A stretch of 64,000 nt of DNA, from positions 124,001 through 188,000 of the IMG/VR virus record IMGVR_UViG_3300029258_002750; one strand, written 5' to 3'. Of the stretch, positions 2,215-60,554 are shown piece by piece. The position numbers and the translations under genes are program-made. The notes under the pieces were generated by a model. It ran no database searches, was not told the origin of the DNA, and saw nothing but the letters and a program-made list of their open reading frames with translations. Numbering within the stretch: the first letter of the stretch is position 1; every line of letters starts with the position of its first letter.

Positions 2215-2223
2215 GTTCTACCC
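2215..2223 (-). promoter_or_regulatory. GGGTAGAAC putative promoter, leaderless
   Basis: 6 nt before ATG 2208; its TAG is the upstream stop. Confidence 0.75.
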
Positions 2224-2493
2224 GGGACTGGCGCCCATCCAGCCGAGTTGTGTCACAGCATCAGGGATCTTGCAGCGGTCGCGCCGGACCGAGATGACTA
2301 GGCCGCTTGGCAGCTTCACCAGGTAGCAGTCCGGCGGCGCAATCATGTAGACCTTGGTGTGCCAGACGCCCTGGTCCCGCTGGTGTTGGGTGTGGATTCC
2401 CAAGTTCAGGTCTACGACCGTCCCCCACGTGTATCGGCAGCGTGGGAACGGTGGCGAGAAGATCACCCGGGAGCCGACCGTGAGGAAGTTCAC
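2218..2493 (-). CDS. SH3/KOW-like protein with C-tag
   Basis: LTVGSRVIF; ends DAVTQLGWM. Confidence 0.75.
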   Translation of the reverse strand: MNFLTVGSRVIFSPPFPRCRYTWGTVVDLNLGIHTQHQRDQGVWHTKVYMIAPPDCYLVKLPSGLVISVRRDRCKIPDAVTQLGWMGASPG

Positions 2494-3071
2494 CGGACGA
2501 CGGCGGCCAGCTGATCGATCGCGCTCAGGGGTCCCAACTCGTCCAGCTCCACGTGCAGGGAGGCGATCTTGATTCCTTTGGCCTCGAAAACGACCAGGAG
2601 CACGTAGTCCTGGTCTCGGCTCGGCTCGGTGGCGCACTTCCAGTCCTTCGCGCGCCTGCGCCATCGCCGGTAACCCGCGCCGTCGCGCATCCCCTCGGGC
2701 GGGTCGGTGTTGTCCCAGTACGGGTAGTCCTCGACGTAGTCCGGCATTACCAGGTTGCCGCGCAGCTCGTGCTCGCCCCAGGGGGAAGCGAAGGTGAAGC
2801 GACCCTTCTCGGGGATCCAGATCTTCCAGCCGCACTCCAGGTCGAACCACGGTCGCCGGAACGACTCCTTGGCGATCTCGCGGAACATATCCATCGTCGC
2901 CATCACGCGGTGGCTCCAGGTATCGACCTCGACCCTCTCGGCCTTGAGCTGAGATGCGATCAGGCGCGCCCGGTCCCGGATGATCTGCCACTGAGCGTGA
3001 CGGACGTCTCGAATGAACGCCGCCAACTTGGCCTTCGGAAAGCGCTTGCCTTCGTAGATCTTGGTGCTCAC
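2490..3071 (-). CDS. hypothetical protein with C-tag
   Basis: GTG 3071; ends SAIDQLAAV. Confidence 0.8.
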   Translation of the reverse strand: MSTKIYEGKRFPKAKLAAFIRDVRHAQWQIIRDRARLIASQLKAERVEVDTWSHRVMATMDMFREIAKESFRRPWFDLECGWKIWIPEKGRFTFASPWGEHELRGNLVMPDYVEDYPYWDNTDPPEGMRDGAGYRRWRRRAKDWKCATEPSRDQDYVLLVVFEAKGIKIASLHVELDELGPLSAIDQLAAVVR

Positions 3072-3325
3072 TCGCCTTTGCCCTCCTCGCGCAGCAGCCG
3101 ATCGCCCAGGACGGATAGACGGGTGATCGCGTTGTCGGTGTAGGGCTCCCAGTCGTCGTATTCGTCCGCTCGCGACATCTGCATCCACTCATAGGCCACG
3201 TCGCAGACGTAGATGTCTTCCTCGAAGCCGGTCATTCTTTCGGCGTACGCTGGCTCGTTGTTGATCGCGGCCGGTCGCTTCGCCAGGCCGCTCTCGCTCA
3301 TCTCGATCGCGCGGCGGACCTTCAC
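3068..3325 (-). CDS. DUF2829-like-outline protein with C-tag
   Basis: RRAIEMSESGLAKR...DDWEP; NAITRLSVL. Confidence 0.7.
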   Translation of the reverse strand: MKVRRAIEMSESGLAKRPAAINNEPAYAERMTGFEEDIYVCDVAYEWMQMSRADEYDDWEPYTDNAITRLSVLGDRLLREEGKGE

Positions 3326-3573
3326 GTCAGCGCCGCCAGCCGCGAGATGGCGTCGGCCTGGATCAGCTCGTGAGTCCAGCGGTGGTAGGTGGCCCTCGAG
3401 TTGCCGAATCGCGGGCCGAGTTGGAAATCGACGACCCACAAGAGGCACTCGCCGATCCCATCAGGATCGTGACCCTCGGGGCACTCGCCGTGGATGCTGT
3501 CGCACACCCACTTGACGACCTCGCCCTCCCAGCCGTGGTCGCGATCGATCACTCGTAGCCCGGGGCGGATCAT
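3322..3573 (-). CDS. SH3/KOW-like protein with C-tag
   Basis: IRPGLRVID..WEGEVV; ends DAISRLAAL. Confidence 0.8.
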   Translation of the reverse strand: MIRPGLRVIDRDHGWEGEVVKWVCDSIHGECPEGHDPDGIGECLLWVVDFQLGPRFGNSRATYHRWTHELIQADAISRLAALT

Positions 3574-3579
3574 GGTGAC

Positions 3580-3588
3580 GTTCTACCC
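3580..3588 (-). promoter_or_regulatory. GGGTAGAAC putative promoter, leaderless
   Basis: 6 nt before ATG 3573. Confidence 0.75.
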
Positions 3589-3618
3589 CGGGTCAGCGCT
3601 CTACCCCGGGTCAGCGCT
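3583..3618. repeat. 18-bp tandem duplication CTACCCCGGGTCAGCGCT x2
   Basis: read directly; overlaps promoter and a GTCAGCGCTGAC palindrome. Confidence 0.9.
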
Positions 3619-3625
3619 GACTCGG

Positions 3626-6014: not shown

Positions 6015-6551
6015 TCACGACCACTCCTCCAGTCCGGTGATGAGCGCGCCGATCTCCGCCAGCTTGGTCTCGGCGACCGCAACCACGGCGCGGATCGCTT
6101 CTTCGGGCGTGTCTCCGTGCTCGGCCCATCTGCCGCCAGACGAGTCCGGGCTTCCCAGGAACGCGGTGTAGTGATCGGGCAGGATCGCGGCCAGCTGATC
6201 GATCGCCGATCCCTTCAGCGTGGTTTCGCCGGTCCGACAGTTGTACGTGCCGTGTCGCCAGTGCTCCTTGAGCTTGATCCTGCGGCACGGCGACCAGACC
6301 GTGTAGTGCCAGCCCATGTTCTCGTGCACCTCGGCGGTCCAGCCCTTGCCCATGTGCTTGGCCAGTGCGTGCGCACGGCGCCTCGCCACCTGGTAAGCCT
6401 TCCAGGTGCACTTCGTACCGCACCACGGCGCGCAGTAGAGGTCGCCTTTACGAACGGCGCGCTTCGAGTAGAGATCCTCGATCTCTTTCTCTCGCTCGGC
6501 GGCCGTCTTGATCTTCTTCCGCTTCCGCTTCCTCCTCGATCGCGTTGTCAT
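6015..6551 (-). CDS. hypothetical protein with internal C-tag
   Basis: internal SAIDQLAAI; leaderless start. Confidence 0.8.
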   Translation of the reverse strand: MTTRSRRKRKRKKIKTAAEREKEIEDLYSKRAVRKGDLYCAPWCGTKCTWKAYQVARRRAHALAKHMGKGWTAEVHENMGWHYTVWSPCRRIKLKEHWRHGTYNCRTGETTLKGSAIDQLAAILPDHYTAFLGSPDSSGGRWAEHGDTPEEAIRAVVAVAETKLAEIGALITGLEEWS

Positions 6552-6832
6552 GGTGTCGTTCTACCCAGCTCGGCGAGACGCTCGATCGCGCCGCCAGGTC
6601 GTAGCTCGTGCTCCATGAACCACTGACCATCCTCCGGTTGGTGGTTCTCCAAGAAGATGCGGTAGACCGGCGGGTGTAGCTTGGTGCCTCGATCGACGGC
6701 GACCACACGCCCGCGCCGCAGATCGAGCGAGACGACCTCCACCAACTCGCCCTTCTCGAAGCCGATCTTGGGCATGACGAGCGGCTCGACGGTGATCTCT
6801 TCCGATCGCGCGGTCAGGAAGTACTTGGGCAC
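6548..6832 (-). CDS. SH3/KOW-like protein with C-tag
   Basis: FEKGELVEV...WFMEHELRP; GAIERLAEL. Confidence 0.8.
   Translation of the reverse strand: MPKYFLTARSEEITVEPLVMPKIGFEKGELVEVVSLDLRRGRVVAVDRGTKLHPPVYRIFLENHQPEDGQWFMEHELRPGGAIERLAELGRTTP
6558..6566 (-). promoter_or_regulatory. GGGTAGAAC putative promoter, leaderless
   Basis: 6 nt before ATG 6551. Confidence 0.75.
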
Positions 6833-7026: not shown

Positions 7027-7361
7027 AGATCCTCGATGCTCCGTAGGCCCAGCCGGACCTCTTCCAGAGCCTTCTTCCTGGCGGTGAGCCGATCGGCTTC
7101 GGCGAGCATGGCGGCAGCCTGGTCTCTAGTGTGCCGGTCGTACTCTCCGTCGGTGTCCCCGGCCACATGCTCTAGTCCTCGGACGGTTGCGGCGAACATC
7201 GCGTTGAGCCTGCGGTCGAATCTCTCCCGGCGACGCCAGTATGCCCAGCTGTGAATGAGCCGATACCACCAGGAGCCGTGGGCGAGCCGGTCGCTCTCGG
7301 CCCTCAGCTTTTCCAGCTCGCGCCGCATCGATTCGTGGAGCTGCATCTCCTCGGGGGTCAT
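7023..7361 (-). CDS. helical hypothetical protein
   Basis: ATG 7361 coupled. Confidence 0.7.
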
Positions 7362-7966
7362 GCGATTCTCCGGCCGCAGCACCGCTTGTACTTCTTCCCG
7401 CTCCGGCATGGGCACGGATCGTTGCGCCTGAGCTTCTCCCCGGGTCGGCGGTAGGTGGACGCGGCCCGCGTGATCCGGCTGTGGTGCTCCCTGGAGGCGC
7501 TGGCTTCCATTGCGGCTCCTGCTGACATGGTGACTCGGTTCCAGAACATCGACCAGGAACCAAACGCCAGGCGATCTCCATCGGCCAGGCACTCGAACCA
7601 CTCGATGAGCCCGTCGCCGGTCTTTCTGTCAACACCGTGCTCCTCGGCCGCGCTCGACAGCGTACCGGCGAGGAGGATCAGCCCTCCCGATCCAGTAAGG
7701 AACCGGACGCCGTAGCCCTCGGGCGTGCCCCGGAGCGCCTCGGTGATGGAGAGCATCTCCTCCTTGTCTCGATCAACCCACGGCTGCGACAGCATGTAGC
7801 GCTGGGCAACGTCCCAGGCCGGGTCGTTGACGACCTTCAGCAGGATCGGGATCGCGGCCCAGTCGACCTCGACGTACCAGCCTTCGTCGACCCACAGGAA
7901 CGTGTCGCGCACGTGTACTACGCCGTCCGCCATGTGGACCTGCATTCCGGGGAACAACTCGCTCAT
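7358..7966 (-). CDS. SEC-C motif protein
   Basis: C-terminal [18 protein letters not shown]; leaderless start. Confidence 0.85.
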
Positions 7967-7972: not shown

Positions 7973-7981
7973 GTTCTACCC
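7973..7981 (-). promoter_or_regulatory. GGGTAGAAC putative promoter, leaderless
   Basis: 6 nt before ATG 7966; TAG is upstream stop. Confidence 0.75.
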
Positions 7982-10263: not shown

Positions 10264-10458
10264 TCAGCCGCCGCGCTTATCACATCCCCCGGTCTCGGGC
10301 TGGTAGGGAGGGCAGCCGCCGCAGGTGCAGTCGCGCTCCTGGGTGCAGTTGTCCTCGGGCACCGGGTAGTAGATGTTCGGGTAGGTCCGGGTGTCCGGCG
10401 CGGCCAGGAGTACGAGCGACGAAAAGACGACGACAAAGACGATCACGGTGTGTGTCAT
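10264..10458 (-). CDS. small exported Cys-rich protein
   Basis: hydrophobic N-terminus; CTQERDCTCGGC. Confidence 0.7.
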   Translation of the reverse strand: MTHTVIVFVVVFSSLVLLAAPDTRTYPNIYYPVPEDNCTQERDCTCGGCPPYQPETGGCDKRGG

Positions 10459-10464: not shown

Positions 10465-10500
10465 GTTCTACCCGGGAGTGTCGCCGACCCGGGGTAGAAC
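10465..10500. promoter_or_regulatory. divergent pair of GGGTAGAAC motifs
   Basis: minus copy 10465-10473 (N6-ATG), plus copy 10492-10500 (then AGGAGG). Confidence 0.75.
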
Positions 10501-12905: not shown

Positions 12906-13300
12906 TGGATCCGCTGGTGGACCTGCCGCGCGATCAGCAGGCGCGCCTTCGAGAGCTGAAGAAGCAGCGCGACAAGATCGACGAGGAGATCCTCGTGGTG
13001 CAAGCACGAGGCGATACCTGGTACCCACGACCACTATGCGACCTACTGCCGCCACTGCGGCCACATGATGGACTCGTGGCTCTGAGGTGGGAGCGGCTGG
13101 CTTGTGGCGCTCTGCGGTTCCACGGCAGGAAAGCCATGACGGAGATCGTCGAGCTGCTGCATGGGGATGACGACTACACCACGTCGATCCCAACCGGCTG
13201 GCCCGCGCCCTTCTGGATTGACGTCTACCCGAAGAACATCGAGGCCCAGAACGAACTACTCCGGCTGGTCGAGGAAGACGAGGGTAGAACGACAGCATGA
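12902..13300 (+). CDS. hypothetical protein
   Basis: coupled ORF. Confidence 0.7.
   Translation: MMDPLVDLPRDQQARLRELKKQRDKIDEEILVVQARGDTWYPRPLCDLLPPLRPHDGLVALRWERLACGALRFHGRKAMTEIVELLHGDDDYTTSIPTGWPAPFWIDVYPKNIEAQNELLRLVEEDEGRTTA
13282..13290 (+). promoter_or_regulatory. GGGTAGAAC putative promoter, leaderless
   Basis: 6 nt before ATG 13297. Confidence 0.75.
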
Positions 13301-16859: not shown

Positions 16860-17071
16860 ACTGGATGGCTGACTACGAGGTGGGCGACGTCTTCCGGTGG
16901 TGCCGAGAGCGAGACGACCTCTGCCGGATCACGCACATCCGCGACGACGAGATCAACTTCGTCCACATCACCGGCCCGCACAAGGGGATGCCCGGCTACA
17001 CGCTGCCGCCACAGGATGTGGAGTTGGTATCGGCCGTCGAACTGCTCGGACTACTGGCGAAGCCCGGGTAG
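16856..17071 (+). CDS. SH3/KOW-like protein with C-tag
   Basis: YEVGDVFRW; SAVELLGLL. Confidence 0.8.
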   Translation: MNWMADYEVGDVFRWCRERDDLCRITHIRDDEINFVHITGPHKGMPGYTLPPQDVELVSAVELLGLLAKPG

Positions 17072-17074
17072 AAC
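17066..17074 (+). promoter_or_regulatory. GGGTAGAAC putative promoter, leaderless
   Basis: 6 nt before ATG 17081 of a 9-aa mini-ORF. Confidence 0.7.
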
Positions 17075-17106
17075 GTTGGTATGAGCGACCAACCGATGTG
17101 CGGGCG

Positions 17107-17785: not shown

Positions 17786-18042
17786 ACATCAACAGTGCAT
17801 TGCGCCTGAGCCGTAACAGGTCCGCCGTCCGGCGGCCCAATAACCAGTGGGAGCCGAGCCGGGTCGAGCTGCACGAGGACAAGGACACGCTCGCCTGGTA
17901 CCTCCGATGGCGGCGACAGTGCTGGAACCGGCTGGGCGAGCGCATCTCCCACCATCTGGCCAGCGATCACGATGACTGGGAGCCCGATCGACCGAAGTCG
18001 GCGGTCGATGCGCTTGGAGAGTTGTCCCGTCGGCCTGGGTAG
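17782..18042 (+). CDS. DUF2829-like-outline protein with C-tag
   Basis: MNINSALRLSRNRSAVRR...DDWEP; SAVDALGEL. Confidence 0.75.
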   Translation: MNINSALRLSRNRSAVRRPNNQWEPSRVELHEDKDTLAWYLRWRRQCWNRLGERISHHLASDHDDWEPDRPKSAVDALGELSRRPG

Positions 18043-18045
18043 AAC
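18037..18045 (+). promoter_or_regulatory. GGGTAGAAC putative promoter
   Basis: TAG is upstream stop; followed by AGGAGG and ATG 18066. Confidence 0.7.
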
Positions 18046-19615: not shown

Positions 19616-19854
19616 AGCTCGAAGTCGGCAAGGTCTACCGAGTCATGCGTGGCGGCGCGTTGTGCGTCAGCGGCTTCGTCGGCTGCCTGGTGCGCGTCGA
19701 GAAGCTGGGCCACGAGCCTGAGGGCGAGAAGTGGGCCTGGGCGCGGCGGCTGAACAGCGGCGAGGCCCAGTGGTTCTACGAGAACGAGCTGCGGGAGGTG
19801 TCGGCGATCGATGCGCTGGCCGAGATCGTCCGGCCGGGTAGAACGAAGGCATGA
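19612..19854 (+). CDS. SH3/KOW-like protein with C-tag
   Basis: LEVGKVYRV...WFYENELRE; SAIDALAEI. Confidence 0.8.
   Translation: MKLEVGKVYRVMRGGALCVSGFVGCLVRVEKLGHEPEGEKWAWARRLNSGEAQWFYENELREVSAIDALAEIVRPGRTKA
19836..19844 (+). promoter_or_regulatory. GGGTAGAAC putative promoter, leaderless
   Basis: 6 nt before ATG 19851. Confidence 0.75.
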
Positions 19855-22414: not shown

Positions 22415-22423
22415 GGGTAGAAC
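22415..22423 (+). promoter_or_regulatory. GGGTAGAAC putative promoter
   Basis: abuts last palindrome, upstream of HTH gene. Confidence 0.65.
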
Positions 22424-28299: not shown

Positions 28300-28318
28300 G
28301 TTCTACCCGGGGTAGAAC
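28300..28318. promoter_or_regulatory. back-to-back promoter pair GTTCTACCCGGGGTAGAAC
   Basis: 19-bp inverted repeat at strand switch; plus copy N6-ATG 28325. Confidence 0.75.
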
Positions 28319-32133: not shown

Positions 32134-32507
32134 CCGAGGTCATCTGCCCCTACTGCGGCCAGCCCGCCCAGCTGACCGACTCGGCCGAGGTCTACGGCGG
32201 CCGGTCCTACGGCAACATCTGGCTCTGCCGACCGTGCGGTGCGCGCGTGGGTACCCACAAGCGCGACGGCAAGACCCCGCTTGGGACGCTTGCTGACGCC
32301 CCGCTGCGAGCGCTCAGGATGCGCGTGCACGGAGACTTCGATCCGCTCTGGAAGCAGGACCCCGAGCCGAGAGGCGCGCGCCTCCGCTGGTACCGGCGGC
32401 TCGCCGAGGCGATGGGGATCGAGCTGAAGGACTGCCATATGGCCATGTTCGACGAGGAGTCGTGTCGTCGGGCGTTGGAGGCGATCGAGATCATCCGACC
32501 CGGGTAG
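32130..32507 (+). CDS. DUF3268-like zinc-finger protein
   Basis: CPYCG..A.L....VYG......WLC..C.A.VG.H.....PLGTLA...LR..R...H..FDPLW. Confidence 0.8.
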   Translation: MTEVICPYCGQPAQLTDSAEVYGGRSYGNIWLCRPCGARVGTHKRDGKTPLGTLADAPLRALRMRVHGDFDPLWKQDPEPRGARLRWYRRLAEAMGIELKDCHMAMFDEESCRRALEAIEIIRPG

Positions 32508-32510
32508 AAC
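32502..32510 (+). promoter_or_regulatory. GGGTAGAAC putative promoter, leaderless
   Basis: 6 nt before ATG 32517; TAG is upstream stop. Confidence 0.75.
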
Positions 32511-39183: not shown

Positions 39184-39202
39184 GTTCTACCCCGGGTAGA
39201 AC
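39184..39202. promoter_or_regulatory. back-to-back promoter pair GTTCTACCCCGGGTAGAAC
   Basis: each copy 6 nt from a start codon (39177 minus, 39209 plus). Confidence 0.8.
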
Positions 39203-41135: not shown

Positions 41136-41141
41136 GTCGGT

Positions 41142-41150
41142 GTTCTACCC
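41142..41150 (-). promoter_or_regulatory. GGGTAGAAC putative promoter, leaderless
   Basis: 6 nt before ATG 41135. Confidence 0.75.
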
Positions 41151-41662: not shown

Positions 41663-41741
41663 GGCTGCCTTCCTCCGGGTTGGTTGAGCAGCAGTTCCTT
41701 TCGCATGAGGCGTGCCGAGGAAACCCCGACCAACCTCTACT

Positions 41742-41772
41742 CCTCCCAACAGCTCACCGGCCCGTTCTCACG
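41742..41772 (-). promoter_or_regulatory. degenerate bipartite motif CGTGAGAAC-N11-CTGTTGGGAGG
   Basis: same N11 spacing as the other copies. Confidence 0.5.
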
Positions 41773-42125: not shown

Positions 42126-42134
42126 GGGTAGAAC
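42126..42134 (+). promoter_or_regulatory. GGGTAGAAC putative promoter, leaderless
   Basis: 6 nt before ATG 42141. Confidence 0.75.
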
Positions 42135-42140
42135 GTCAGC

Positions 42141-43229: not shown

Positions 43230-43513
43230 CCGAGAACGAGTTCATACGAGAGATCACGGCTCTCGGGTTCTACCCGCTCACCGGCCACGGCACGCGGCCA
43301 GCGAGCGACCTCGTCCACGATCGCCTGAGCATGATGGTCGATCTTCGCGGGCTGAGGCGGCGAGCAACCTACCGCCGTGGCAATCCCTACCTCAGCGCTC
43401 TTGCGGCAATAGCGCGTGAGATCAGCAAGCTCGATGCGATTGATCAGCTCGCCCTGCTGGGAGATACGCTGCCGACCGAGGTAGAACAGGGGTTAGAGGA
43501 ACATGATCTATGA
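43226..43513 (+). CDS. hypothetical protein with C-tag
   Basis: DAIDQLALL. Confidence 0.7.
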   Translation: MTENEFIREITALGFYPLTGHGTRPASDLVHDRLSMMVDLRGLRRRATYRRGNPYLSALAAIAREISKLDAIDQLALLGDTLPTEVEQGLEEHDL

Positions 43514-43860: not shown

Positions 43861-44216
43861 GGTTCTGGGAGGCGGTCCGCTGGAGCAAGAGCGGTGTTGC
43901 GTCCTACGTGGTGAAGGAGCCAGGCTGTCCAGAAAACCCGATGACTGAGGAGGAGATCGAGGAGGCGTTCTGCCTCTCCAGCCGCCTGAACGTGAAGATC
44001 GCGCAGGGTCAGCCGGTTCTCATCAACGACAACCACTACGCAGCCGATCGCGTGCCGGATCTGATCGAGAACAGCGTCGAGTGGGAGCCATTTCCGCCCG
44101 TCCGCGACGCGATTTCTGAGCTGGGGAGTCTGACCCCCGAGGTAGAACTGGGGCATGACCCTGGACGAGGCCCTGGGATGGAGCGATCGGCGCGCGGCGG
44201 TCCGTACACCAGCTGA
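43857..44216 (+). CDS. DUF2829-like-outline protein with C-tag
   Basis: MRFWEAVRWSKSGVA...VEWEP; DAISELGSL. Confidence 0.7.
   Translation: MRFWEAVRWSKSGVASYVVKEPGCPENPMTEEEIEEAFCLSSRLNVKIAQGQPVLINDNHYAADRVPDLIENSVEWEPFPPVRDAISELGSLTPEVELGHDPGRGPGMERSARGGPYTS
44140..44148 (+). promoter_or_regulatory. AGGTAGAAC promoter variant, leaderless
   Basis: 6 nt before ATG 44155. Confidence 0.65.
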
Positions 44217-51850: not shown

Positions 51851-51859
51851 GGGTAGAAC
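51851..51859 (+). promoter_or_regulatory. GGGTAGAAC putative promoter, leaderless
   Basis: 6 nt before GTG 51866. Confidence 0.75.
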
Positions 51860-51865: not shown

Positions 51866-52330
51866 GTGGAAGACCGTATCGTCGGCCTACAGGGACTCTT
51901 CGACAAGTGTGTCGCACGCGGCGTGAGCTGGAAGAAGCTCGCGGCCGTGTTCGATGGCATCGGCGGCTACCTCGGCGTGCGCGGCCGGGAGCTGGGCTAC
52001 GACGATGTCCAGTGGAACGCGGCCACGGTGCGAACAGCTCTCCACACGATGAGGCTCGCGGCCGAGCCGAAGACCCATCGTGTGCGCGGCGGCTACCACC
52101 CGACGAGGCCGCGCTACGCGCACGTGGATCTCAGTGTGGAGGAGATCCAGAGGCGGTCGATCCCGCACCTACAGCGGTGCATGGAGGCTACGCTCGACGC
52201 TTTCCGCTTCTTCGCCAGGCGGTACCGTGACGAGTTCGCGGACGAGCTGGAGCGCATTCTCAAGATCGGACTCACCGAGCACCTGGACGCGATCGACGCG
52301 CTGGGTGCGCTGACACCAGTAGAGGACTGA
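51866..52330 (+). CDS. hypothetical protein with C-tag
   Basis: DAIDALGAL. Confidence 0.8.
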   Translation: MEDRIVGLQGLFDKCVARGVSWKKLAAVFDGIGGYLGVRGRELGYDDVQWNAATVRTALHTMRLAAEPKTHRVRGGYHPTRPRYAHVDLSVEEIQRRSIPHLQRCMEATLDAFRFFARRYRDEFADELERILKIGLTEHLDAIDALGALTPVED

Positions 52331-52683: not shown

Positions 52684-53075
52684 ACGATCCTCTTGTTCCG
52701 CTCACGCCCGGCCCGCCGTGCCCGTCCTGTGGCTCGCGCGTGTCCATGCGCGCGCTCATGATGCTGCGCGACTCGCTGGAGGAGCGGAAGAAGAGGATCG
52801 AGCAACGTCGTCGGGAGGCCGCAGCTCCGCCCGGCTCTCTACTCGCTGGCAACAGCGCGGTCATCGGGGCGATGAACGTGATTCAGCAGCACGTGATCGT
52901 CACCGGGCCTGGAGGAGTCAGTAGTGAGGACGAGGTCTGTGCCGACTGCGGCACCCACTGGAAGCCGACAGCGAAGGTCGAAAGCGACGAACTGCGCGCG
53001 GAGATACGCAGGCTCCGTACGGAGATCGACTCGGCCGTAGATCTGCTCGGAGAGCTGGGTAGAACGTCACCATGA
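52680..53075 (+). CDS. double Zn-ribbon protein with C-tag
   Basis: possible CTG start at 52680 (CTGA overlap) restores CPSC...CADC; SAVDLLGEL. Confidence 0.65.
   Translation: MNDPLVPLTPGPPCPSCGSRVSMRALMMLRDSLEERKKRIEQRRREAAAPPGSLLAGNSAVIGAMNVIQQHVIVTGPGGVSSEDEVCADCGTHWKPTAKVESDELRAEIRRLRTEIDSAVDLLGELGRTSP
53057..53065 (+). promoter_or_regulatory. GGGTAGAAC putative promoter, leaderless
   Basis: 6 nt before ATG 53072 of a 29-aa mini-ORF. Confidence 0.7.
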
Positions 53076-53099
53076 GCGAGCGTCAGATCAGGAGGTCCG

Positions 53100-53768
53100 A
53101 TGTCTGGGGGCGAGATGCGTACCTGTGCGAGCGAGGGATGCGAGGAGCCGACGAAGGATGAGCGGTGTCCTCTGTGCCAAGCGGAGGACGAGGTCTTCTC
53201 CGAGGAGAAGCTCTCGCCGCGCGAGCTGCTGAAGGCTAGCCTCGCCCGACTACGACAAGTCGAGGAGGAGCACCGTGCGCTCTGCGAGAGGCTGGCGGAC
53301 AGCGAGGGCCTCGACGGCATGGCCGAGGATCTGATCGAGATCGGCCGTCTGCCGCCGTCCAAGCTCAAGTACCCGATCGAGATCACCGACGTCCGTGGAT
53401 CGGGCCTGCTCGAGTGGCTCGAAGAGAACAGGCTCAACTGGCGCAAGCCGGGCACGTTCGTCAGCGTCCGGCCATGCGGCGACGAGTACGAGGGCAAGAC
53501 CTACTTCGGCATCCTCATCGGCGATCTGCCGATCAGCGTCGGCATCAGCTATGACGACGAGACGGGTCAGCTTCACGTGTGCGCTGGGCACGGCAACCCG
53601 GCGATCTTCGTGCCCGCTCTCGGCAAGCTCATCTTCGGCTGCGGCTCGTTCTGGGGGCCGATCAAGGACCCGGAGCAGGTCCGAAAGATCACCGACGACG
53701 AGATCCAGAATCTCTGGTACATGAAGGCGATCAAGGCCCAGCTGGCTGGGCTGGAAGGCGACGCGTGA
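53100..53768 (+). CDS. hypothetical protein with N-terminal Zn finger
   Basis: CASEGC...CPLC; GGAGG RBS. Confidence 0.8.
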   Translation: MSGGEMRTCASEGCEEPTKDERCPLCQAEDEVFSEEKLSPRELLKASLARLRQVEEEHRALCERLADSEGLDGMAEDLIEIGRLPPSKLKYPIEITDVRGSGLLEWLEENRLNWRKPGTFVSVRPCGDEYEGKTYFGILIGDLPISVGISYDDETGQLHVCAGHGNPAIFVPALGKLIFGCGSFWGPIKDPEQVRKITDDEIQNLWYMKAIKAQLAGLEGDA

Positions 53769-54979: not shown

Positions 54980-55189
54980 ATGCTGCCGGACTACCTGATC
55001 GCCCTGACGGACCTTCACGAGAAGACGCCCCAGTTCTTCCGGGACGAGGTCTTCGCTCACGGGGATGCCAAGACCAGGATCGTCGCGCTCAGGATCCTAC
55101 GCGATGGCCTGGACCCCGTGCGGCGCTCCTCGCCTGTTCTCCGGGCGATGATGCAGATCGAGTCCAAGGAGCACGGAAACGCTGGGTAG
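54980..55189 (+). CDS. hypothetical protein
   Basis: AGGAG RBS. Confidence 0.7.
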   Translation: MLPDYLIALTDLHEKTPQFFRDEVFAHGDAKTRIVALRILRDGLDPVRRSSPVLRAMMQIESKEHGNAG

Positions 55190-55192
55190 AAC
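55184..55192 (+). promoter_or_regulatory. GGGTAGAAC putative promoter
   Basis: TAG is upstream stop; followed by AGGAGG. Confidence 0.7.
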
Positions 55193-55213: not shown

Positions 55214-55735
55214 ATGCCTTTCGTGAGGCTCGACGCAGACGAGATGGAGTTGATCCTGCTCCACCTGCCGGACGACACCGTGTGCCACGATCTCCGCTTG
55301 CGCCTTGGCACGATCCTGCCGATGGTCCCCCATCTACCTGAGAACTTCGTGGTTGCTGGGTCGGACGAGCACCACGTGGCGAGCAGCGAGGGCGTACCCG
55401 AGGAGCCCAAGGCCGAGGAGACCTGTTCGCCTCCCACTCAGGCCCACGCCGAGAAGCCCTGGCCCGAGGGCGTCGTGCCCTTCGGAACCCTGCCCTTCGG
55501 TTGGCGTCGACACGGCGAGCGCGTCGTGCGCGCCAAGGAGGAGCAGGACGTCATGAAGTGGATCCTGAAGGGGAAGAAGAAGGGGTGGACTCACGCCCAG
55601 ATCGCTGCCGATCTGAACGGCCGTCTCCTTCGCACCCGTCGTGGCTCCAAGTGGGAAGGGAGCGGCGTGGGACGTCTGCTGAAGACGTCAATCGAGCACG
55701 AGATGAACAAGCACCTCAAGAAGCGCTGGGGCTAG
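55214..55735 (+). CDS. serine-recombinase DNA-binding (Recombinase) domain protein lacking catalytic domain
   Basis: PFGW...EQDVMKWI...G.T.AQIAADLN.....TRRGSKW....V.RLL. Confidence 0.7.
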   Translation: MPFVRLDADEMELILLHLPDDTVCHDLRLRLGTILPMVPHLPENFVVAGSDEHHVASSEGVPEEPKAEETCSPPTQAHAEKPWPEGVVPFGTLPFGWRRHGERVVRAKEEQDVMKWILKGKKKGWTHAQIAADLNGRLLRTRRGSKWEGSGVGRLLKTSIEHEMNKHLKKRWG

Positions 55736-55775: not shown

Positions 55776-57239
55776 ATGACCACGCTGACCGCACTGCTGC
55801 TCGAGGCCCGTCGAGGCAGGATGGGCCGCTCCGGCCGCCGCCGTCCGCTCAAGACGGCTCCGCGTCACAAGACATCGGCCAGGCGCGAGAAGAAGTCCGC
55901 CAAGCCCATCAAGATCACCAAGGAGATGCTCAAGAAGGGCGTCAAGCCCGAGGGCGTCACCTGGAAGGACTGGATGCAGGCAGGCGGCAAGTTCGGTGGC
56001 GGTACAGGCAAGCCCAGGCCGAAGAAGCTCCGCGTCCCGAGCCATGTGGAGGTTGAGATCGGCCGCTGGGCGCTCGATCGGGTCTACATCAGCGACTCGA
56101 ATCTCGAGCACCACCTCCAGCGATCTGGCCGCAAGGGAGATCTCCCGCACACGGCCGCATGGGTCGGTACGGACAAGGAGCGGATGAAGCTCCTGCTCAA
56201 GTTAGGCGTTCGTCACTACCGCAAGAAGGGCCGGAAGTCGAAGGAGAAGGAGAAGGCGAAGTCGGTCTCGAAGTCGATGGGGAAGGCGCTCTCGGCCGAC
56301 CCGTTCGCGGGAGCCAGCTGGGGAGACGAGGACAAACTCCAGCAGACCGGCTGGTGGGGCGTGGGCGGCGGCAAGAAGGCATCGAAGCGGCTCCCGAAGC
56401 CGAAGCCGAAGCTCACGCCCGAGCAGCAGAAGCTCCGAGATCTGGTGAGCGGCTTCAAGAAGAAGATGTCGCACATCCCGCGTACGGCGGCCGGTGGCAT
56501 CGTCTTCAAGACGTTCGAGGGTCCCGATCTCTGGGATCTGCCGGTGCTGGCCTGCCAGGTCGCGCCCAAGTACGGCACCTACTGGGTGTTCCCGAAGGGT
56601 GGTCTCGACATTGGCGAGAGCCTGCACAAGGGGGCGGCTCGCGAGGTCAAGGAGGAGAGCGGTGTTCGTGCGAAGGTCGCGAACAACCAGGCGCACGTTA
56701 CCAAGAGCAAGTTCGGTGACCGTGGCAAGTACGACCTTCCGCTCATCCTGAAGCTGATGAAGGAGCAGTACCCCAAGGAGGCCAAGTTCATCGAGTCCCA
56801 GGCTGAGGAGATCAAGGGGATGTTCTTCTCCTGGGAGAATGAGACCCACTACTACGTGATGAAGCACACCGGCGGCTCGCCGGGGTCTGGCACCGATCAC
56901 GAGATGGCCCGCTCCGAGTGGGTATCGCTGCGCGACGCGTTCAAGCGCAGCTATCGGATGGAGGAGGTCGTCACGAAGCTCTTCCCGGTGATCAGGCGGA
57001 TGTGGAAGCCGACCGGCGAGGCGAAGAAGCCGCTGCCGATCTCGGCGCTGCGGACGCCCAAGCCGAAGACGATGCCGGTCGGCAAGCCATCGGGCAAACC
57101 GATCGGCCCGAGCCGGATCGTGATTACACCGGCCACGAAGCAGTCGCAGAAGCACACGCCGCTGAAGCAGTGGCCGCCGCCGAAGAAGCAGACCAGCTAC
57201 AAGAGCTACCCGATCTGGAAGCTCTACGGCGGCAGCTAG
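55776..57239 (+). CDS. Lys-rich protein with Nudix hydrolase domain
   Basis: WVFPKG + Nudix box GGLDIGESLHKGAAREVKEESGV. Confidence 0.9.
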   Translation: MTTLTALLLEARRGRMGRSGRRRPLKTAPRHKTSARREKKSAKPIKITKEMLKKGVKPEGVTWKDWMQAGGKFGGGTGKPRPKKLRVPSHVEVEIGRWALDRVYISDSNLEHHLQRSGRKGDLPHTAAWVGTDKERMKLLLKLGVRHYRKKGRKSKEKEKAKSVSKSMGKALSADPFAGASWGDEDKLQQTGWWGVGGGKKASKRLPKPKPKLTPEQQKLRDLVSGFKKKMSHIPRTAAGGIVFKTFEGPDLWDLPVLACQVAPKYGTYWVFPKGGLDIGESLHKGAAREVKEESGVRAKVANNQAHVTKSKFGDRGKYDLPLILKLMKEQYPKEAKFIESQAEEIKGMFFSWENETHYYVMKHTGGSPGSGTDHEMARSEWVSLRDAFKRSYRMEEVVTKLFPVIRRMWKPTGEAKKPLPISALRTPKPKTMPVGKPSGKPIGPSRIVITPATKQSQKHTPLKQWPPPKKQTSYKSYPIWKLYGGS

Positions 57240-57628
57240 CTCTCGCTCGGATCAGGGTGCGTCGCGGCCAGCACATCGATCGTGCTGGTCGAGTCGCCGA
57301 CGATCGCCTGGATCTCGGCTGCGCTGACGCCCTTCAGGATGAGCGCTCGCATGAGGCGCAGGATCGCCTCGCTCTTGGCGCTCTCCCGCGTGTCCTTCGA
57401 TCGCCAGCCGCAGCTCGGACAGAACGGCTGGGCCAGCTCCCAGGAGGCGGCCACGATCTGCACGCGGGAGGTCTTGATCGAGGACTTCGTGAAGCCGACG
57501 CCCTCCCAGGGGTAGGGCGCCGACATGGTGACGTTGTAGAGCGCGACCAGCTTGCCGTCACAGCCTGGCGCCGGGCAGGGGCACGCCTCGAACTCGTTGG
57601 CCTTGCTCCAGTTCTTGTCCTTCGCCAT
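57236..57628 (-). CDS. Zn-ribbon protein with degenerate C-tag
   Basis: CP.PGC...CPSC; STIDVLAAT. Confidence 0.75.
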   Translation of the reverse strand: MAKDKNWSKANEFEACPCPAPGCDGKLVALYNVTMSAPYPWEGVGFTKSSIKTSRVQIVAASWELAQPFCPSCGWRSKDTRESAKSEAILRLMRALILKGVSAAEIQAIVGDSTSTIDVLAATHPDPSES

Positions 57629-57634: not shown

Positions 57635-57643
57635 GTTCTACCC
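57635..57643 (-). promoter_or_regulatory. GGGTAGAAC putative promoter, leaderless
   Basis: 6 nt before ATG 57628. Confidence 0.75.
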
Positions 57644-58467: not shown

Positions 58468-59297
58468 GCTGCCTTCTCTTCGGCCTCGGGCGTCTTGAAC
58501 CAGTCCGGCTCGCGCCAGCCGTCTTCCTTCGCTTCCTCGATTGAGTCGTAGCCGGAGGCGATGGCCTCGTCTTCGGGTGTCCAGGTCTCACCCCTGTTGA
58601 TCGCCTGGCGGCCCTCGTATGTCAGGTCGATCTCGTCGCCGTCGTGCGAGCTGTCGTAGTCGGTGTCGGCATTGGCGAGCACGTAGCCCCATCCACCGCA
58701 CAGCTTGCACACGTCCTTCGCGTAGGGCCTGCCGCCCATGTGCCCCTCGCCCTCGCATCGGGGGCACGCCCAGACGGGCGCGTCGTGCGGCGAGGCGTAG
58801 TGATGGCTCTCCTCGCGCGCCTTGTGCAGCAGCTTCAGGATGGGCAGTACTTGCTCTTCGCACCCCGCGTACTCCAGCAACGCCATGGCGAGCCGGACGA
58901 CTTCGTGCGCAGGCTGCTCTCGCGCGAACTTGCCGACTGGTGAGGAGTAGCCCTCGATGATCTTGTCCACGGCCAGGGAGAAGACGACCTCGCGCTCGGC
59001 GTCGGCCTTTGCCTCGGCCTCGGTCTTCTTCGCAACCTCGGCCAGCTTCTCGACCGCGCTCATGTCGTGGCGGTCGCACAACTTCTTCGCCGACTCGTGT
59101 GCCAGCTGCCAGAGCCTTTCCTCCTCTTCGTCGAGGCAATTCCTGGGCTCCAGCCCTTCGCAGATGGTGTGCTCGTAGCGATACCGCGCGAGGGACAGGT
59201 CGGTGCCGAGACTCGCGACGTGGGACAGGAACTCCTCCTTGGTGAGCGGGGTGTTGTGCCCGTCCGGGACCGGAACGTATCGCCGCTGGTAGGTCAC
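58464..59297 (-). CDS. hypothetical protein with DnaJ-like CxxCxGxG Zn finger
   Basis: CPRCEGEG...CKLCGGWG. Confidence 0.75.
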   Translation of the reverse strand: MTYQRRYVPVPDGHNTPLTKEEFLSHVASLGTDLSLARYRYEHTICEGLEPRNCLDEEEERLWQLAHESAKKLCDRHDMSAVEKLAEVAKKTEAEAKADAEREVVFSLAVDKIIEGYSSPVGKFAREQPAHEVVRLAMALLEYAGCEEQVLPILKLLHKAREESHHYASPHDAPVWACPRCEGEGHMGGRPYAKDVCKLCGGWGYVLANADTDYDSSHDGDEIDLTYEGRQAINRGETWTPEDEAIASGYDSIEEAKEDGWREPDWFKTPEAEEKAA

Positions 59298-59467
59298 TTC
59301 TTCTCCGTGCACCGCTTGCAGCGTCGCCGTCTCGCGATCGGTTTGCTCGCGTCGACCAGCGTGTAGTGACCGCACTCCAGGTACTCGACGCGGAACTGGC
59401 TCATGACCGACTCGCCGTTCGGCTTGTCGTTCGACTGTCGCACGACCCTGCGGAGCGGAGCGGCCAT
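59294..59467 (-). CDS. small Zn-finger protein
   Basis: LECGH...RRCKRC; both ends coupled. Confidence 0.7.
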   Translation of the reverse strand: MAAPLRRVVRQSNDKPNGESVMSQFRVEYLECGHYTLVDASKPIARRRRCKRCTEKK

Positions 59468-60483
59468 TAGTAGCGCGCCCCAGAGATTCCGCTCGCGCTC
59501 ACGTAGTCCGGGTCGCCGGGGATGGCCGAGGCGCCGACCGTCGCGGGCTCCTCGGTGGTCCCGTTTGCGGCCTTCTCCAGCTTGTTGACGAGCTTCTCGA
59601 AGAAGCCGCGCTGCTTGCCGCCCGGCGCGAACGAGCCGAACTTGACGACCTTCGCGGCGATGTCCTTGATCGCGTTGCGCTCGTAGTCGTCGAGCTTGCT
59701 CGCGCCAGCGTCCCACGCCTTCCGGGAGCGGTTGATCAGTTCGGCGTCGTCGGCCGCCAGCTCGGCCAGGTCGTCGTCGGGGACCGGCTGGGTGGGCTCG
59801 CCCATCTTGACCGTCTCGGGCTCCGGCTCGCTGGCCTTCTGGGCGTCCAGCTCGGCCTGCTTGTCGAGCACCGGCTCGAGCCGCTTGATCCACTCCTGCG
59901 CGGTCTTCCGCACGCAGGTGCCGTCGAGCACCTTGTAGGCGTTCTTCGAGAGTGCCTTGCGGTCGTACCAGGAGAGGACCGACCGTGCCTTGTAGCCGGT
60001 CTTGTGGAAGAGCGCGTAGACCGTCTGGCGCGCCGTCTTGTCCTCCTCGACCGAGAGACCGCGCGTCTCCAGCAGCTCCAGGCAGAGGTCTTCGCAGACC
60101 TTCACCTTCATCGCGGCCTTGCACTTGGACATCTCCTTGTCCCAGCGCTTGAGGGCCTCGAGCTTCTCGGCCGACTCCGGCACCGCGTCCAGCCAGTCGG
60201 TGATGCACTTGGACCCGACCGGGGAGAGGGTGACCTCCTCGGTTCGCACGAGGCCGGTCGCGACCTTGCCGAGCGCGGTCGGCGTGTCGGGCGCCTCGAA
60301 GTGGATCGCGAAGAGCCACTTGATGTTCTTGTGCTCGCAGAGGATGCAGTCGTCGCCGTCGTCCTCGTAGCCGATGAACTCGGGGTGTGCGAAGGCGACG
60401 TCGTGGTCGCCGAGGCCGTGCTTCGCGAACACCTCGGCGCGCTTCAGGTTGTGCTTGTTGATCGTCTTCTTGCTGAGTGCCAC
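59467..60483 (-). CDS. hypothetical protein with Zn finger
   Basis: CILCEH...VGSKCI; AAGGAG RBS. Confidence 0.8.
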   Translation of the reverse strand: MALSKKTINKHNLKRAEVFAKHGLGDHDVAFAHPEFIGYEDDGDDCILCEHKNIKWLFAIHFEAPDTPTALGKVATGLVRTEEVTLSPVGSKCITDWLDAVPESAEKLEALKRWDKEMSKCKAAMKVKVCEDLCLELLETRGLSVEEDKTARQTVYALFHKTGYKARSVLSWYDRKALSKNAYKVLDGTCVRKTAQEWIKRLEPVLDKQAELDAQKASEPEPETVKMGEPTQPVPDDDLAELAADDAELINRSRKAWDAGASKLDDYERNAIKDIAAKVVKFGSFAPGGKQRGFFEKLVNKLEKAANGTTEEPATVGASAIPGDPDYVSASGISGARY

Positions 60484-60501
60484 TGTGTGACTCCTTCCAC
60501 C

Positions 60502-60532
60502 CCTCTCAACAACCAGGCGTCTGGTTCTCACA
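60502..60532 (-). promoter_or_regulatory. bipartite motif TGTGAGAAC-N11-TTGTTGAGAGG
   Basis: copy 4. Confidence 0.7.
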
Positions 60533-60545
60533 CCTCTCTTTGAAG

Positions 60546-60554
60546 GTTCTACCC
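60546..60554 (-). promoter_or_regulatory. GGGTAGAAC putative promoter
   Basis: upstream of bipartite motif. Confidence 0.6.

What the first reader, a model, noticed from the sequence alone, without database searches (positions are those of the whole stretch)
2215..60554. Genome-wide GGGTAGAAC motif placed exactly 6 nt before start codons
I found about 26 copies on both strands, always pointing into an operon. In 18 the start codon follows after exactly 6 nt with no RBS (2208, 3573, 6551, 7966, 10458, 13297, 17081, 19851, 28325, 32517, 39177, 39209, 41135, 42141, 44155, 51866, 53072, 57628). Most of the rest are followed by an AGGAGG-type RBS. This is the geometry of an extended -10 element driving leaderless mRNAs. 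The -10 reads TAGAAC instead of the canonical TANNNT and no shared -35 is evident, which suggests a phage-specific sigma factor or RNA polymerase.
Basis: partly seen in the sequence, partly recalled or inferred. Interest (0 to 1): 0.7.

Follow-up and report, generated by a model that had tools for sequence, protein, structure and literature searches.

The report
Phage promoter motif for leaderless genes
An uncultivated 275-kb phage carries 51 identical copies of a 9-letter DNA word placed 6 letters before start codons, which is most likely a promoter that makes messages with no leader; the arrangement is a known kind, but this word and its strictness are new.

Summary
GGGTAGAAC occurs 24 times in the window (0.13 expected) and 51 times in the whole 275,101-bp phage genome. 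ATG or GTG follows after exactly 6 nt in 27 of the 51. 48 of 51 copies point the same way as the next gene, 12 of 19 divergent gene junctions carry the word, and none of 19 convergent junctions do.

The exact 9-mer is kept in related phage fragments down to about 56% portal identity. At orthologous sites the 9-mer and the ATG are conserved, while the 6-nt spacer and everything upstream drift. No -35 block exists.

This is the geometry of a -10-type promoter element whose transcripts start at the A of ATG. The other copies sit about 7 nt before an AGGAGG site. The word is absent from the structural-gene block. It drives replication genes and many small genes of unknown function.

Outside the window the phage encodes one sigma-like protein, with an ECF-type sigma-2 domain. 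No phage RNA polymerase was found. Whether this sigma or the host's sigma reads the motif is unresolved, because no RNA data and no host are available. It is a new variant of a known kind: a -10 element next to the ORF, giving leaderless mRNA.

The parts
2215..2223 (-). Motif copy. ATG at 2208 after 6 nt; leaderless gene 1552-2208 (218 aa, SEC-C motif). The upstream gene stops at the TAG inside the motif.
3580..3588 (-). Motif copy. ATG at 3573 after 6 nt; 83-aa ORF 3322-3573.
6558..6566 (-). Motif copy. ATG at 6551 after 6 nt; gene 6015-6551 (178 aa). The upstream gene reads through the motif and ends at the TGA of ATGA.
7973..7981 (-). Motif copy. ATG at 7966 after 6 nt; gene 7358-7966 (202 aa, SEC-C motif).
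10465..10473 (-). Motif copy, left arm of a divergent pair. ATG at 10458 after 6 nt; gene 10264-10458 (64 aa).
10492..10500 (+). Motif copy, right arm of the divergent pair. AGGAGG starts 7 nt after it and ATG follows 17 nt after it (120-aa ORF ending 10880). Leadered type.
13282..13290 (+). Motif copy. ATG at 13297 after 6 nt; gene 13297-13800 (167 aa).
17066..17074 (+). Motif copy. The ATG at 17081 after 6 nt opens only 9 codons. Coding ORFs start 23-83 nt downstream.
18037..18045 (+). Motif copy. AGGAGG follows, and the ATG at 18066 lies 20 nt after the motif; gene 18066-18416. Leadered type.
19836..19844 (+). Motif copy. ATG at 19851 after 6 nt; gene 19851-20117 (88 aa).
22415..22423 (+). 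Motif copy directly after the last of 7 hairpin repeats. A GTG 19 nt downstream opens an XRE-type HTH gene, 22443-22673.
28300..28308 (-). Motif copy, left arm of a back-to-back pair 1 nt apart. GGAGG follows, then a GTG 19 nt downstream; gene ending at 28059.
28310..28318 (+). Motif copy, right arm of the pair. ATG at 28325 after 6 nt; gene 28325-28702 (125 aa).
32502..32510 (+). Motif copy. ATG at 32517 after 6 nt; 79-aa ORF 32517-32756.
39184..39192 (-). Motif copy, left arm of a back-to-back pair 1 nt apart. ATG at 39177 after 6 nt; gene 38839-39177 (112 aa).
39194..39202 (+). Motif copy, right arm of the pair. The GTG at 39209 after 6 nt opens a 78-codon ORF with a negative coding score. 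The real gene lies further on, behind a TAGAAT word at 39354.
41142..41150 (-). Motif copy. ATG at 41135 after 6 nt; gene 40899-41135 (78 aa).
42126..42134 (+). Motif copy. ATG at 42141 after 6 nt; gene 42141-42560 (139 aa).
43267..43275 (-). Orphan motif copy, antisense inside + strand gene 43226-43513. No ORF of 30 aa or more lies within 120 nt. Still conserved in relative G003.
51851..51859 (+). Motif copy. GTG at 51866 after 6 nt; gene 51866-52330 (154 aa).
53057..53065 (+). Motif copy. The ATG at 53072 opens only 29 codons. AGGAGG and the ATG at 53100 start the real gene, 53100-53768.
55184..55192 (+). Motif copy. AGGAGG starts 7 nt after it, and the ATG at 55214 lies 21 nt after it; gene 55214-55735. 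Leadered type.
57635..57643 (-). Motif copy. ATG at 57628 after 6 nt; gene 57236-57628 (130 aa).
60546..60554 (-). Motif copy. 13 nt further on lies the second conserved leader (GTGAGAAC-N11-TTGTTGAGAGG-AGGAG), then the GTG start of gene 59467-60483.
44140..44148 (+). One-mismatch variant AGGTAGAAC. ATG at 44155 after 6 nt opens a 76-codon ORF with a weak coding score.
43479..43487 (+). One-mismatch variant AGGTAGAAC. The ATG at 43510 lies 22 nt after it; gene 43510-43860.

Best explanation
GGGTAGAAC is the core, -10-type element of a phage promoter class.

How it works (inferred). RNA polymerase melts the DNA at TAGAAC and starts about 7 nt after the C. In roughly 30 of 51 copies that base is the A of ATG, so the message has no 5' leader and no ribosome-binding site. 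In most other copies the transcript starts just before an AGGAGG site and has a leader of about 15-25 nt. There is no -35 element.

What it drives. The class drives the non-structural part of the genome: replication genes such as the clamp, a helicase and RNase H, plus many small genes of unknown function. It is not found in the virion gene block.

Who reads it. The invariant C where ordinary -10 elements have T, and its strict coupling to the GGG, suggest a dedicated specificity factor on the host core enzyme. The best candidate is the phage's own ECF-like sigma (genome 59176-60063), which would itself be made from ordinary TAnnnT-type promoters.

Shown versus inferred. Shown: the motif, its geometry, its orientation, its conservation, and the existence of the sigma gene. 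Inferred: that transcription starts at the ATG, and which factor reads the motif. I put promoter function at about 0.85 and the assignment to the phage sigma at about 0.5. The confidence given here is for the whole statement.
For: Abundance and strictness
- 51 exact copies against about 3 expected.
- One-mismatch variants sit near background.

Geometry
- A start codon lies at +6 in 27 of 51 copies, and at +7 in a few more.
- 25 of those 27 starts are ATG, against 51% ATG genome-wide. None of the 18 called genes in this class has an SD core, against 214 of 390 other genes.
- The base before the start codon is C or T in 25 of 26.
- In the leadered copies the SD begins about 7 nt after the motif.

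Placement
- 40 of 51 copies lie within 100 nt upstream of a gene on the same strand.
- 48 of 51 point the same way as the next gene.
- 12 of 19 divergent junctions carry the motif, including back-to-back pairs 1 nt apart. None of 19 convergent junctions does.

Selection
- In 24 orthologous pairs the 9 positions are identical in 22-24 of 24, against about 78% background.
- The spacer is at or below background, the ATG is kept in 22-23 of 24, and nothing upstream is conserved.
- The same 9-mer and geometry occur in relatives G001, G003, G004, G005 and G006. It is also present in a contig whose sigma is only 37% identical.

Genes served
- Clamp, helicase, RNase H and ORFans. None lies in the 188-266 kb structural block except a small insert at 197.8-200.2 kb, and none lies in the 50-80 kb sigma region.

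The factor
- There is one sigma-like gene, with an ECF-type sigma-2 fold: Z 10-11 to sigmaE, SigW and CnrH.
- Its operon is preceded by TAnnnT-type words, not by the motif.
- GGG goes with a final C and other triplets go with a final T in leaderless geometry: 30:2 against 5:3, 16:0 against 5:5, and 18:0 against 3:2 in three genomes.
- In the best-studied case of a -10 element next to the ORF, the sixth T is nearly invariant for the host sigma (PMC12340547).
- Fourteen bacterial genomes from candidate host groups show no excess of GGTAGAAC-N6-ATG.
Against: - No RNA run holding this phage was listed, so no start site has been seen.
- The host is unknown. There is only a weak hint towards Myxococcota, from ribonucleotide reductase similarity.
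- The sigma has a sigma-4-like segment and a C-terminal extension. ECF sigmas normally need a -35 element with AAC, and these promoters have no -35.
- The 9-mer stays identical in phages whose sigma has diverged to 37% identity. That is at least as easy to explain by a conserved host sigma.
- A second conserved element (GTGAGAAC-N11-TTGTTGAGAGG, 12 copies) has a two-part shape that would suit an ECF sigma better.
- One relative (L199) has TCGTAGAAC in front of its own sigma operon.
- Caulobacter's housekeeping -10 consensus, GCtANAWC, matches 7 of the 8 bases of GGTAGAAC.
- Four of 51 copies are antisense or deep inside genes.
- The complex prediction was not run by the tool and gives no evidence either way.
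Confidence: 0.5

Rival explanations
1. The motif has the same promoter and leaderless function, but it is read by the host's primary sigma as a strong -10-only, extended -10-like promoter. That would make these the phage's early promoters, with no phage sigma involved.
For: - TAGAAC keeps the T and A of TANNNT. Related TAGAAT, TAGGAT and TAAGAT words sit before other genes, some also 6-7 nt from the start.
- A -10 element alone is enough for the host sigma in Deinococcus (PMC12340547).
- Caulobacter RpoD prefers GCtANAWC, with C at the last place.
- The 9-mer is unchanged across phages whose sigma is only 37% identical.
- The many short operons of small unknown genes look like early genes.
Against: - A primary sigma normally tolerates variation, but here 51 copies are identical and variants are near background.
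- GGG and the final C are coupled, as if they form a class separate from the TAGAAT words.
- The sixth T is nearly invariant for host sigma recognition where it has been tested.
- Fourteen genomes of candidate host groups show no excess of the arrangement.
- The phage tmRNA is the one-piece type, which gives no support to an alphaproteobacterial host.
Confidence: 0.3
2. It is a promoter read by some other phage factor. This could be a protein that re-aims the host sigma, as T4 AsiA and MotA do, or an unrecognised phage RNA polymerase, for example the conserved giant protein (2086 aa) encoded near the sigma gene.
For: - A gene block of ParB-like, sigma, about 220 aa, about 680 aa and a giant 1800-2086 aa protein is conserved in four distant relatives.
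- The giant protein matches no family or solved structure.
- Strict invariant promoters are typical of phage-specific polymerases.
Against: - No T7-like or multi-subunit polymerase domain was found. The T7-family search had no positive control.
- The TAGAA core looks like a sigma-type -10 element.
- Nothing points to a polymerase fold in the giant protein.
Confidence: 0.08
3. The word acts in RNA rather than DNA. It could be a cleavage site that trims transcripts to a leaderless form, or a signal for restarting translation after the upstream gene's stop codon (the TAG inside the motif).
For: - In about 20 copies the upstream gene ends at the motif's TAG or at the TGA of ATGA.
- The fixed 6-nt distance to the ATG would also suit a translation signal.
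Against: - Back-to-back divergent pairs 1 nt apart, and copies in divergent junctions, have no upstream gene on the same strand.
- About ten copies sit before an ordinary SD at 7 nt and not before an ATG.
- The pyrimidine and purine rule at the predicted start is a transcription feature.
Confidence: 0.05
4. The GAAC at the end of the motif is an ECF-type -35 element (AAC motif). The matching -10 element and the transcription start would then lie about 17-30 nt downstream.
For: - The phage sigma is ECF-like.
- ECF -35 elements contain GGAAC-like words (established knowledge).
Against: - No conserved block lies 16-20 nt after the motif.
- Such transcripts would start inside the ORFs and lose the conserved ATG.
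Confidence: 0.03

Closest known systems
-10 element next to the ORF giving leaderless mRNA in Deinococcus-Thermus (Zhong et al. 2025, PMC12340547) and, by earlier computational work, in Actinobacteria
   Same: - A -10-type word lies a fixed few bases before the start codon.
- There is no SD, and a -35 is dispensable.
- The distance to the start codon matters.
   Different: - There the word is a loose TANNNT with an almost invariant last T, and it is read by the host RpoD.
- Here the word is a 9-base invariant with C in that place. It is carried by a phage clade and is absent from the candidate host genomes tested.
Thermus phage phiYS40 middle and late promoters (Sevostyanova et al. 2007; recalled from memory, seen here only as a citation in PMC12340547)
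   Same: A large phage in which many non-early transcripts are leaderless and come from promoters with a -10-like element and no -35.
   Different: - As I recall, phiYS40 encodes no sigma, and its motif is a TA-rich extended -10.
- Here the word is GGGTAGAAC and a phage sigma gene exists.
Phage T4 late promoters (TATAAATA, read by gp55 with gp33 and the sliding clamp; established knowledge)
   Same: - A strictly conserved promoter with a -10 element only, in many copies.
- It is read by a phage-encoded sigma-family protein on the host core enzyme.
- This phage has a T4-like portal and prohead protease.
   Different: - T4's motif serves the late, structural genes. This one is missing from the structural block.
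- gp55 is a sigma-2-only protein. This sigma also has a sigma-4-like part and an extension.
- T4 late messages have leaders.
Caulobacter housekeeping promoter -10 consensus GCtANAWC
   Same: GGTAGAAC matches 7 of its 8 positions, including the unusual final C.
   Different: - Caulobacter promoters also have a TTGaCgS -35, and the consensus is loose.
- Nothing shows that this phage infects an alphaproteobacterium.
- The phage tmRNA is the one-piece type.
Start-associated sequences of cluster K mycobacteriophages (recalled from memory)
   Same: A conserved short word repeated many times immediately upstream of start codons in a phage genome.
   Different: As I recall, those 13-bp words contain the ribosome-binding site and are thought to act in translation. 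Here there is no SD, and the word also sits upstream of ordinary SD sites.

Membership tests
sigma-70-family -10 promoter element | It lies about 6-7 nt upstream of the transcription start. | not testable with these tools
   No RNA run was listed. As a proxy, there is a fixed 6-nt gap to ATG in 27 of 51 copies, with a pyrimidine before a purine at the predicted start.
sigma-70-family -10 promoter element | TANNNT hexamer with conserved T(-12), A(-11) and T(-7). | tested here: not met
   T and A are invariant, but the last base is C in all 51 copies and in all relatives.
sigma-70-family -10 promoter element | It points towards the gene it serves, sits at operon heads and divergent junctions, and is not found at convergent ones. 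| tested here: met
   48 of 51 copies point the same way as the next gene, 12 of 19 divergent junctions carry it, and 0 of 19 convergent junctions do.
extended -10 promoter | TGn immediately upstream of the hexamer, making up for a missing -35. | tested here: inconclusive
   The three bases are GGG, so the G of TG is present and the T is not. There is no -35.
leaderless mRNA | The start codon lies at the 5' end, AUG is strongly preferred, and there is no SD. | tested here: met
   For the sequence part: 25 ATG and 2 GTG against 51% ATG overall, and 0 of 18 with an SD core. The 5' end itself was not observed.
ECF-sigma promoter | A -35 element with AAC, and a -10 element (CGT or GTC type) 16-17 nt downstream. 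| tested here: not met
   No conserved block lies 16-20 nt after the motif, and no -35 lies before it.
T4-type late promoter system | It serves the structural (late) genes. | tested here: not met
   No copy lies in the 188-266 kb structural block, apart from a small insert at 197.8-200.2 kb.
ECF (group 4) sigma factor, for the phage protein at genome 59176-60063 | Sigma-2 domain. | tested here: met
   Pfam Sigma70_r2 at 25-28 bits, over the cut-off. The PDB profile search finds CnrH and sigmaE. The fold matches at Z 10-11 with rmsd 1.9-3.0 A over about 90 residues.
ECF (group 4) sigma factor, for the phage protein at genome 59176-60063 | Sigma-4 domain that reads the -35 element. | tested here: inconclusive
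   No Pfam r4 hit was found. However, ordinary ECF sigmas align to about residue 200, and whole-chain structural alignments cover residues 25-229 at high rmsd.
Caulobacter-type RpoD -10 element (GCtANAWC) | It is read by an alphaproteobacterial housekeeping sigma, together with a TTGaCgS -35. | tested here: not met
   There is no -35. The host is unknown. The word itself matches 7 of 8 positions.

The most novel reading that the evidence does not exclude
A clade of uncultivated jumbo phages uses its own ECF-like sigma, which carries a cysteine-bearing C-terminal extension, to read a 9-bp promoter with no -35 and with C where every studied -10 element has T. This would switch on a regulon of about 50 promoters whose messages are mostly leaderless. 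It would be a phage-made transcription and translation channel kept separate from the host's.
Probability: 0.35. Interest if true: 0.7.

Novelty: new variant of a known kind. Interest (0 to 1): 0.55.

Why it matters
If the motif is a promoter, this genome comes with a ready map of about 50 start sites and corrected start codons for genes that ordinary annotation would misplace. It would also show that a whole group of large environmental phages runs much of its early and replication programme on leaderless messages.

If the phage sigma reads the motif, the pair would be a compact, orthogonal promoter and sigma set. It would also be a test case for how a sigma-2 domain accepts C at the last -10 position and works without a -35. 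The claim can be tested directly with purified proteins, even though the host is unknown.

Tried and rejected
- **RNA evidence.** The phage is present in sediment and seawater DNA runs, but no RNA run was listed.
- **Complex prediction.** It gives no evidence.
- **Literature.** A search for the 9-mer found only primers and microRNA sequences.
- **Back-to-back palindrome.** A scan of viral contigs for it found nothing outside this genome's own records.
- **Cultured relatives.** The best phage matches to the portal are 31% identical, and there were none to the sigma.
- **GGTGCRAMTCC.** This word looked like a second promoter class in relatives, but it is the T-arm of tRNA genes.
- **Phage polymerases and translation factors.** T7-like and multi-subunit polymerase domains were not found. 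S21 and IF3 genes were not found either.
- **Giant 2086-aa protein.** It has no family, structure or atlas match.
- **Sigma and motif co-variation across distant relatives.** Most contigs carrying sigma homologues are too short or could not be fetched.
- **Host.** Only a weak Myxococcota hint came from ribonucleotide reductase similarity. Relatives cannot be drawn for a virus record.
- **Gene calls.** They come from my own crude codon-bias caller, so individual start sites outside the motif class are approximate.

Full report
**What the window is.** The window is bases 124001-188000 of a 275,101-bp virus record with direct terminal repeats, judged complete. GC content is about 65%. The phage encodes:
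- a T4-type portal, a prohead protease and a tail sheath;
- a tape-measure-like protein;
- DnaB, family A DNA polymerase, a bacterial-type sliding clamp, RecA, class II ribonucleotide reductase and RNase H;
- 36 tRNA genes and a one-piece tmRNA.

It has no close cultured relative. It occurs in sediment and seawater DNA runs. It is therefore an uncultivated jumbo myovirus with an unknown host. The only host hint is that its ribonucleotide reductase is most like those of Myxococcota, at 55-57% identity.

- GGGTAGAAC occurs 24 times in the window against 0.13 expected, and 51 times in the genome against 3 for the reversed control word.
- It is the most over-represented 9-mer in the genome.
- The word is nearly invariant. 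All one-mismatch variants together are close to background. Only AGGTAGAAC, and to a lesser extent GGGTAGAAT, share its placement.
- A start codon follows after exactly 6 nt in 27 of 51 copies (25 ATG, 2 GTG), where about 0.5 ATG would be expected. A few more copies have the start at 7 nt.
- In the window, 17 exact copies and one variant have this geometry, and 14 of them open ORFs with clear coding signal.
- The ATGs at 17081 and 53072, the GTG at 39209 and the variant's ATG at 44155 open short or poorly coding frames.

**Placement.**
- 40 of 51 copies lie within 100 nt upstream of a gene on the same strand.
- 48 of 51 point the same way as the next gene.
- 12 of 19 divergent junctions carry at least one copy, and none of 19 convergent junctions does.
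- Three window junctions hold pairs on opposite strands. Two of them (28300/28310 and 39184/39194) are only 1 nt apart, and each arm faces its own gene.
- Only 4 copies are antisense or deep inside a gene. In the window this is 43267(-).
- Copy 22415, which seemed to have no gene, precedes a 76-aa XRE-type HTH gene.

**Fine structure.**
- The consensus is CC-N-GGGTAGAAC-G-W-N-R-G-Y-ATG-A.
- The base before the start codon is C or T in 25 of 26 cases, and the start base is A or G. This is the usual preference at a transcription start.
- Genes of this class have no SD core: 0 of 18 called ones, against 214 of 390 other genes.
- They use ATG far more often than the genome average of 51%, as expected for translation from a 5'-terminal AUG.
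- In about ten other copies an AGGAGG-type site begins about 7 nt after the motif, with the start codon at 17-27 nt. A start about 7 nt after the motif would give those messages a minimal leader that begins at the SD.
- An RNA-level signal tied to the ATG would not explain this second class, nor the back-to-back pairs.

**Selection.** The 9-mer is also the top word in related phage fragments:

| Relative | Similarity to this phage | Copies | Fragment size |
|---|---|---|---|
| G001 | sigma 84% identical | 9 | 75 kb |
| G003 | portal 85% identical | 29 | 160 kb |
| G004 | portal 71% identical | 14 | 131 kb |
| G005 | portal 60% identical | 34 | 120 kb |
| G006 | portal 56% identical | 9 | 73 kb |

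- The geometry is kept in these relatives; G005 has 17 of 34 copies with a start at +6.
- In 24 orthologous pairs with about 78% background identity, the nine positions are identical in 22-24 of 24.
- The six spacer positions are at or below background, and the ATG is kept in 22-23 of 24.
- No block upstream is conserved.

So the word itself is under selection, independently of the coding sequence around it, and there is no -35 element.

**What the word overlaps.** In about 20 copies the upstream gene ends at the TAG inside the motif, or reads through it and ends at the TGA of ATGA. This follows from tight gene packing. Copies in divergent junctions have no upstream gene on the same strand.

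**Which genes it serves.**
- The word precedes the clamp gene, a helicase, RNase H and a long series of small genes with no known family.
- It is absent from 50-80 kb, where the sigma gene lies.
- It is absent from the 188-266 kb virion block, apart from a small divergent insert at 197.8-200.2 kb.
- This marks it as an early or middle class, not a late one.

**Other promoter-like words.**
- Classical TTGACA-N17-TAnnnT promoters are almost absent. One good example lies at genome 263535.
- Looser TAGAAT, TAGGAT and TAAGAT words are enriched upstream of genes (10 against 0.4 expected). Several also lie 6-7 nt before a start codon.
- In leaderless geometry GGG goes with the final C, and other triplets go with the final T: 30:2 against 5:3 in this genome, 16:0 against 5:5 in G003, and 18:0 against 3:2 in G005. 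This suggests two classes rather than one graded consensus.
- A third element, GTGAGAAC-N11-TTGTTGRGAGRGG followed by an SD, has 12 copies. It is shared only with the closest relative G003.

**Who reads the motif.**
- No T7-like or multi-subunit RNA polymerase domain was found. The T7 search had no positive control.
- One sigma-like gene exists, at genome 59176-60063, outside the window.
- Its residues 25-125 are an ECF-type sigma-2 domain: a profile match to CnrH and sigmaE, and a fold match at Z 10-11 with rmsd 1.9-3.0 A.
- A full HMMER scan of 1.84 billion representatives finds about 25 full-length relatives. It also shows that ordinary ECF sigmas align on to about residue 200. The protein therefore probably has a diverged sigma-4 part, followed by a C-terminal extension with conserved cysteines and a tryptophan.
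- The gene sits in a conserved block with a ParB-like gene and a giant protein of unknown nature.
- Its operon is preceded by TAnnnT-type words in this phage and in two relatives (L197, L198), and by TCGTAGAAC in a third, L199.

*For the phage sigma:* the motif's invariance, its C at the position where T is nearly invariant for host sigma recognition in the best-studied comparable system (PMC12340547), the coupling of GGG and C, and the lack of any excess of the arrangement in 14 bacterial genomes from candidate host groups.

*Against it:* ECF sigmas normally need a -35. The 9-mer stays the same where the sigma is only 37% identical. The two-part GTGAGAAC element would suit an ECF sigma better. 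A housekeeping sigma that prefers a final C is known in Caulobacter, with consensus GCtANAWC.

I cannot decide between the two readings with the data at hand.

**Comparison with what is known.**
- A -10 element placed a few bases before the ORF, working without a -35 and giving leaderless mRNA, is an established expression mode in Deinococcus-Thermus.
- From memory, the same mode is found in Actinobacteria and in the middle and late genes of Thermus phage phiYS40.
- Strictly conserved -10-only phage promoters read by a phage sigma are known from T4 late genes.

What is new here:
- the word itself, with all nine bases invariant and C at the last place;
- its conservation across a clade of uncultivated jumbo phages;
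- its use for the non-structural programme;
- its presence in a genome that also encodes an unusual ECF-like sigma family.

I file it as a new variant of a known kind.

Noticed in passing
whole genome; window examples are the C-termini of genes 16856-17071, 17158-17361, 19612-19854, 32556-32756 and 52740-53075: At least 24 otherwise unrelated small proteins, and RNase H, end in the same 9-residue peptide S-A-[VI]-[ED]-x-L-[GA]-[ED]-[LI], within 12 residues of the C-terminus. There are 28 strict matches against 0.005 in shuffles, and no homology between the N-terminal parts. Codons vary, so selection acts on the protein. The peptide is abundant in relative G005 too (35 near a stop). It matches no Pfam family. 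It looks like a shared docking or targeting tag.
   Followed up: partly
genome 6.5-16.7 kb (outside the window; loci L011, L012): About 32 of 36 phage tRNA genes have a T-loop starting TGC instead of the near-universal TTC, meaning G at position 55 where pseudouridine normally sits. The same GGTGCRAMTCC word is over-represented in relatives G003, G004, G005 and G007.
   Followed up: partly
window 9887, 10244, 21111, 41771 and 60531 (all - strand); 12 copies in the genome: A second conserved leader: GTGAGAAC-N11-TTGTTGRGAGRGG-N3-5-AGGAG-N5-8-start. Four copies are preceded by ACTTAS-N9. It shares AGAAC with the main motif and is present only in the closest relative G003. It could be a two-part promoter or a conserved 5' UTR.
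   Followed up: partly
window 3610, 14371, 17442, 25428, 35476 and 43209, and all over the genome: The perfect palindrome GTCAGCGCTGAC occurs at 18 exact sites, plus about 15 GTCRGCGCYGAC variants, mostly inside genes and spread over the whole genome. It is also over-represented in relative G003. A ParB-like gene sits next to the sigma gene, so a parS-like role is possible.
   Followed up: no
window 21376-22411: Seven copies of a strong hairpin, GGTGCCCCC-N4-5-GGGGGCACC, lie in a stretch of about 1.3 kb with no called gene. The stretch sits between a class-2 leader and the motif copy at 22415, next to an XRE-type regulator gene. It may be an origin, a set of terminators, or small RNAs.
   Followed up: partly
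genome 58256-69573 (L023) and loci L039, L197, L198, L199: A conserved gene block: ParB_N protein, ECF-like sigma, a protein of about 220 aa, a protein of about 680 aa, and a giant protein of 1800-2086 aa with no detectable family, solved-structure or atlas match.
   Followed up: partly
genome 191916-194747 (L018) and 40880-43639 (L013): The prohead protease gene carries a Hint/LAGLIDADG homing-endonuclease insert (an intein). The family A DNA polymerase has an intein-splicing domain hit.
   Followed up: no
window 17081-17110 and 53072-53161; genome 197935: Three motif copies are followed at +6 by an ATG that opens only 9, 29 or 10 codons, ahead of the real gene. These may be leaderless mini-ORFs.
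   Followed up: no
window 26225-26233, 39354 and 55763; genome 22116, 27241, 104744 and 204102: TAGAAT, TAGGAT and TAAGAT words (ordinary TAnnnT type) lie upstream of other genes, several also 6-7 nt before the start codon. This points to a second, looser class of -10-only promoters, including ones in the structural region.
   Followed up: partly
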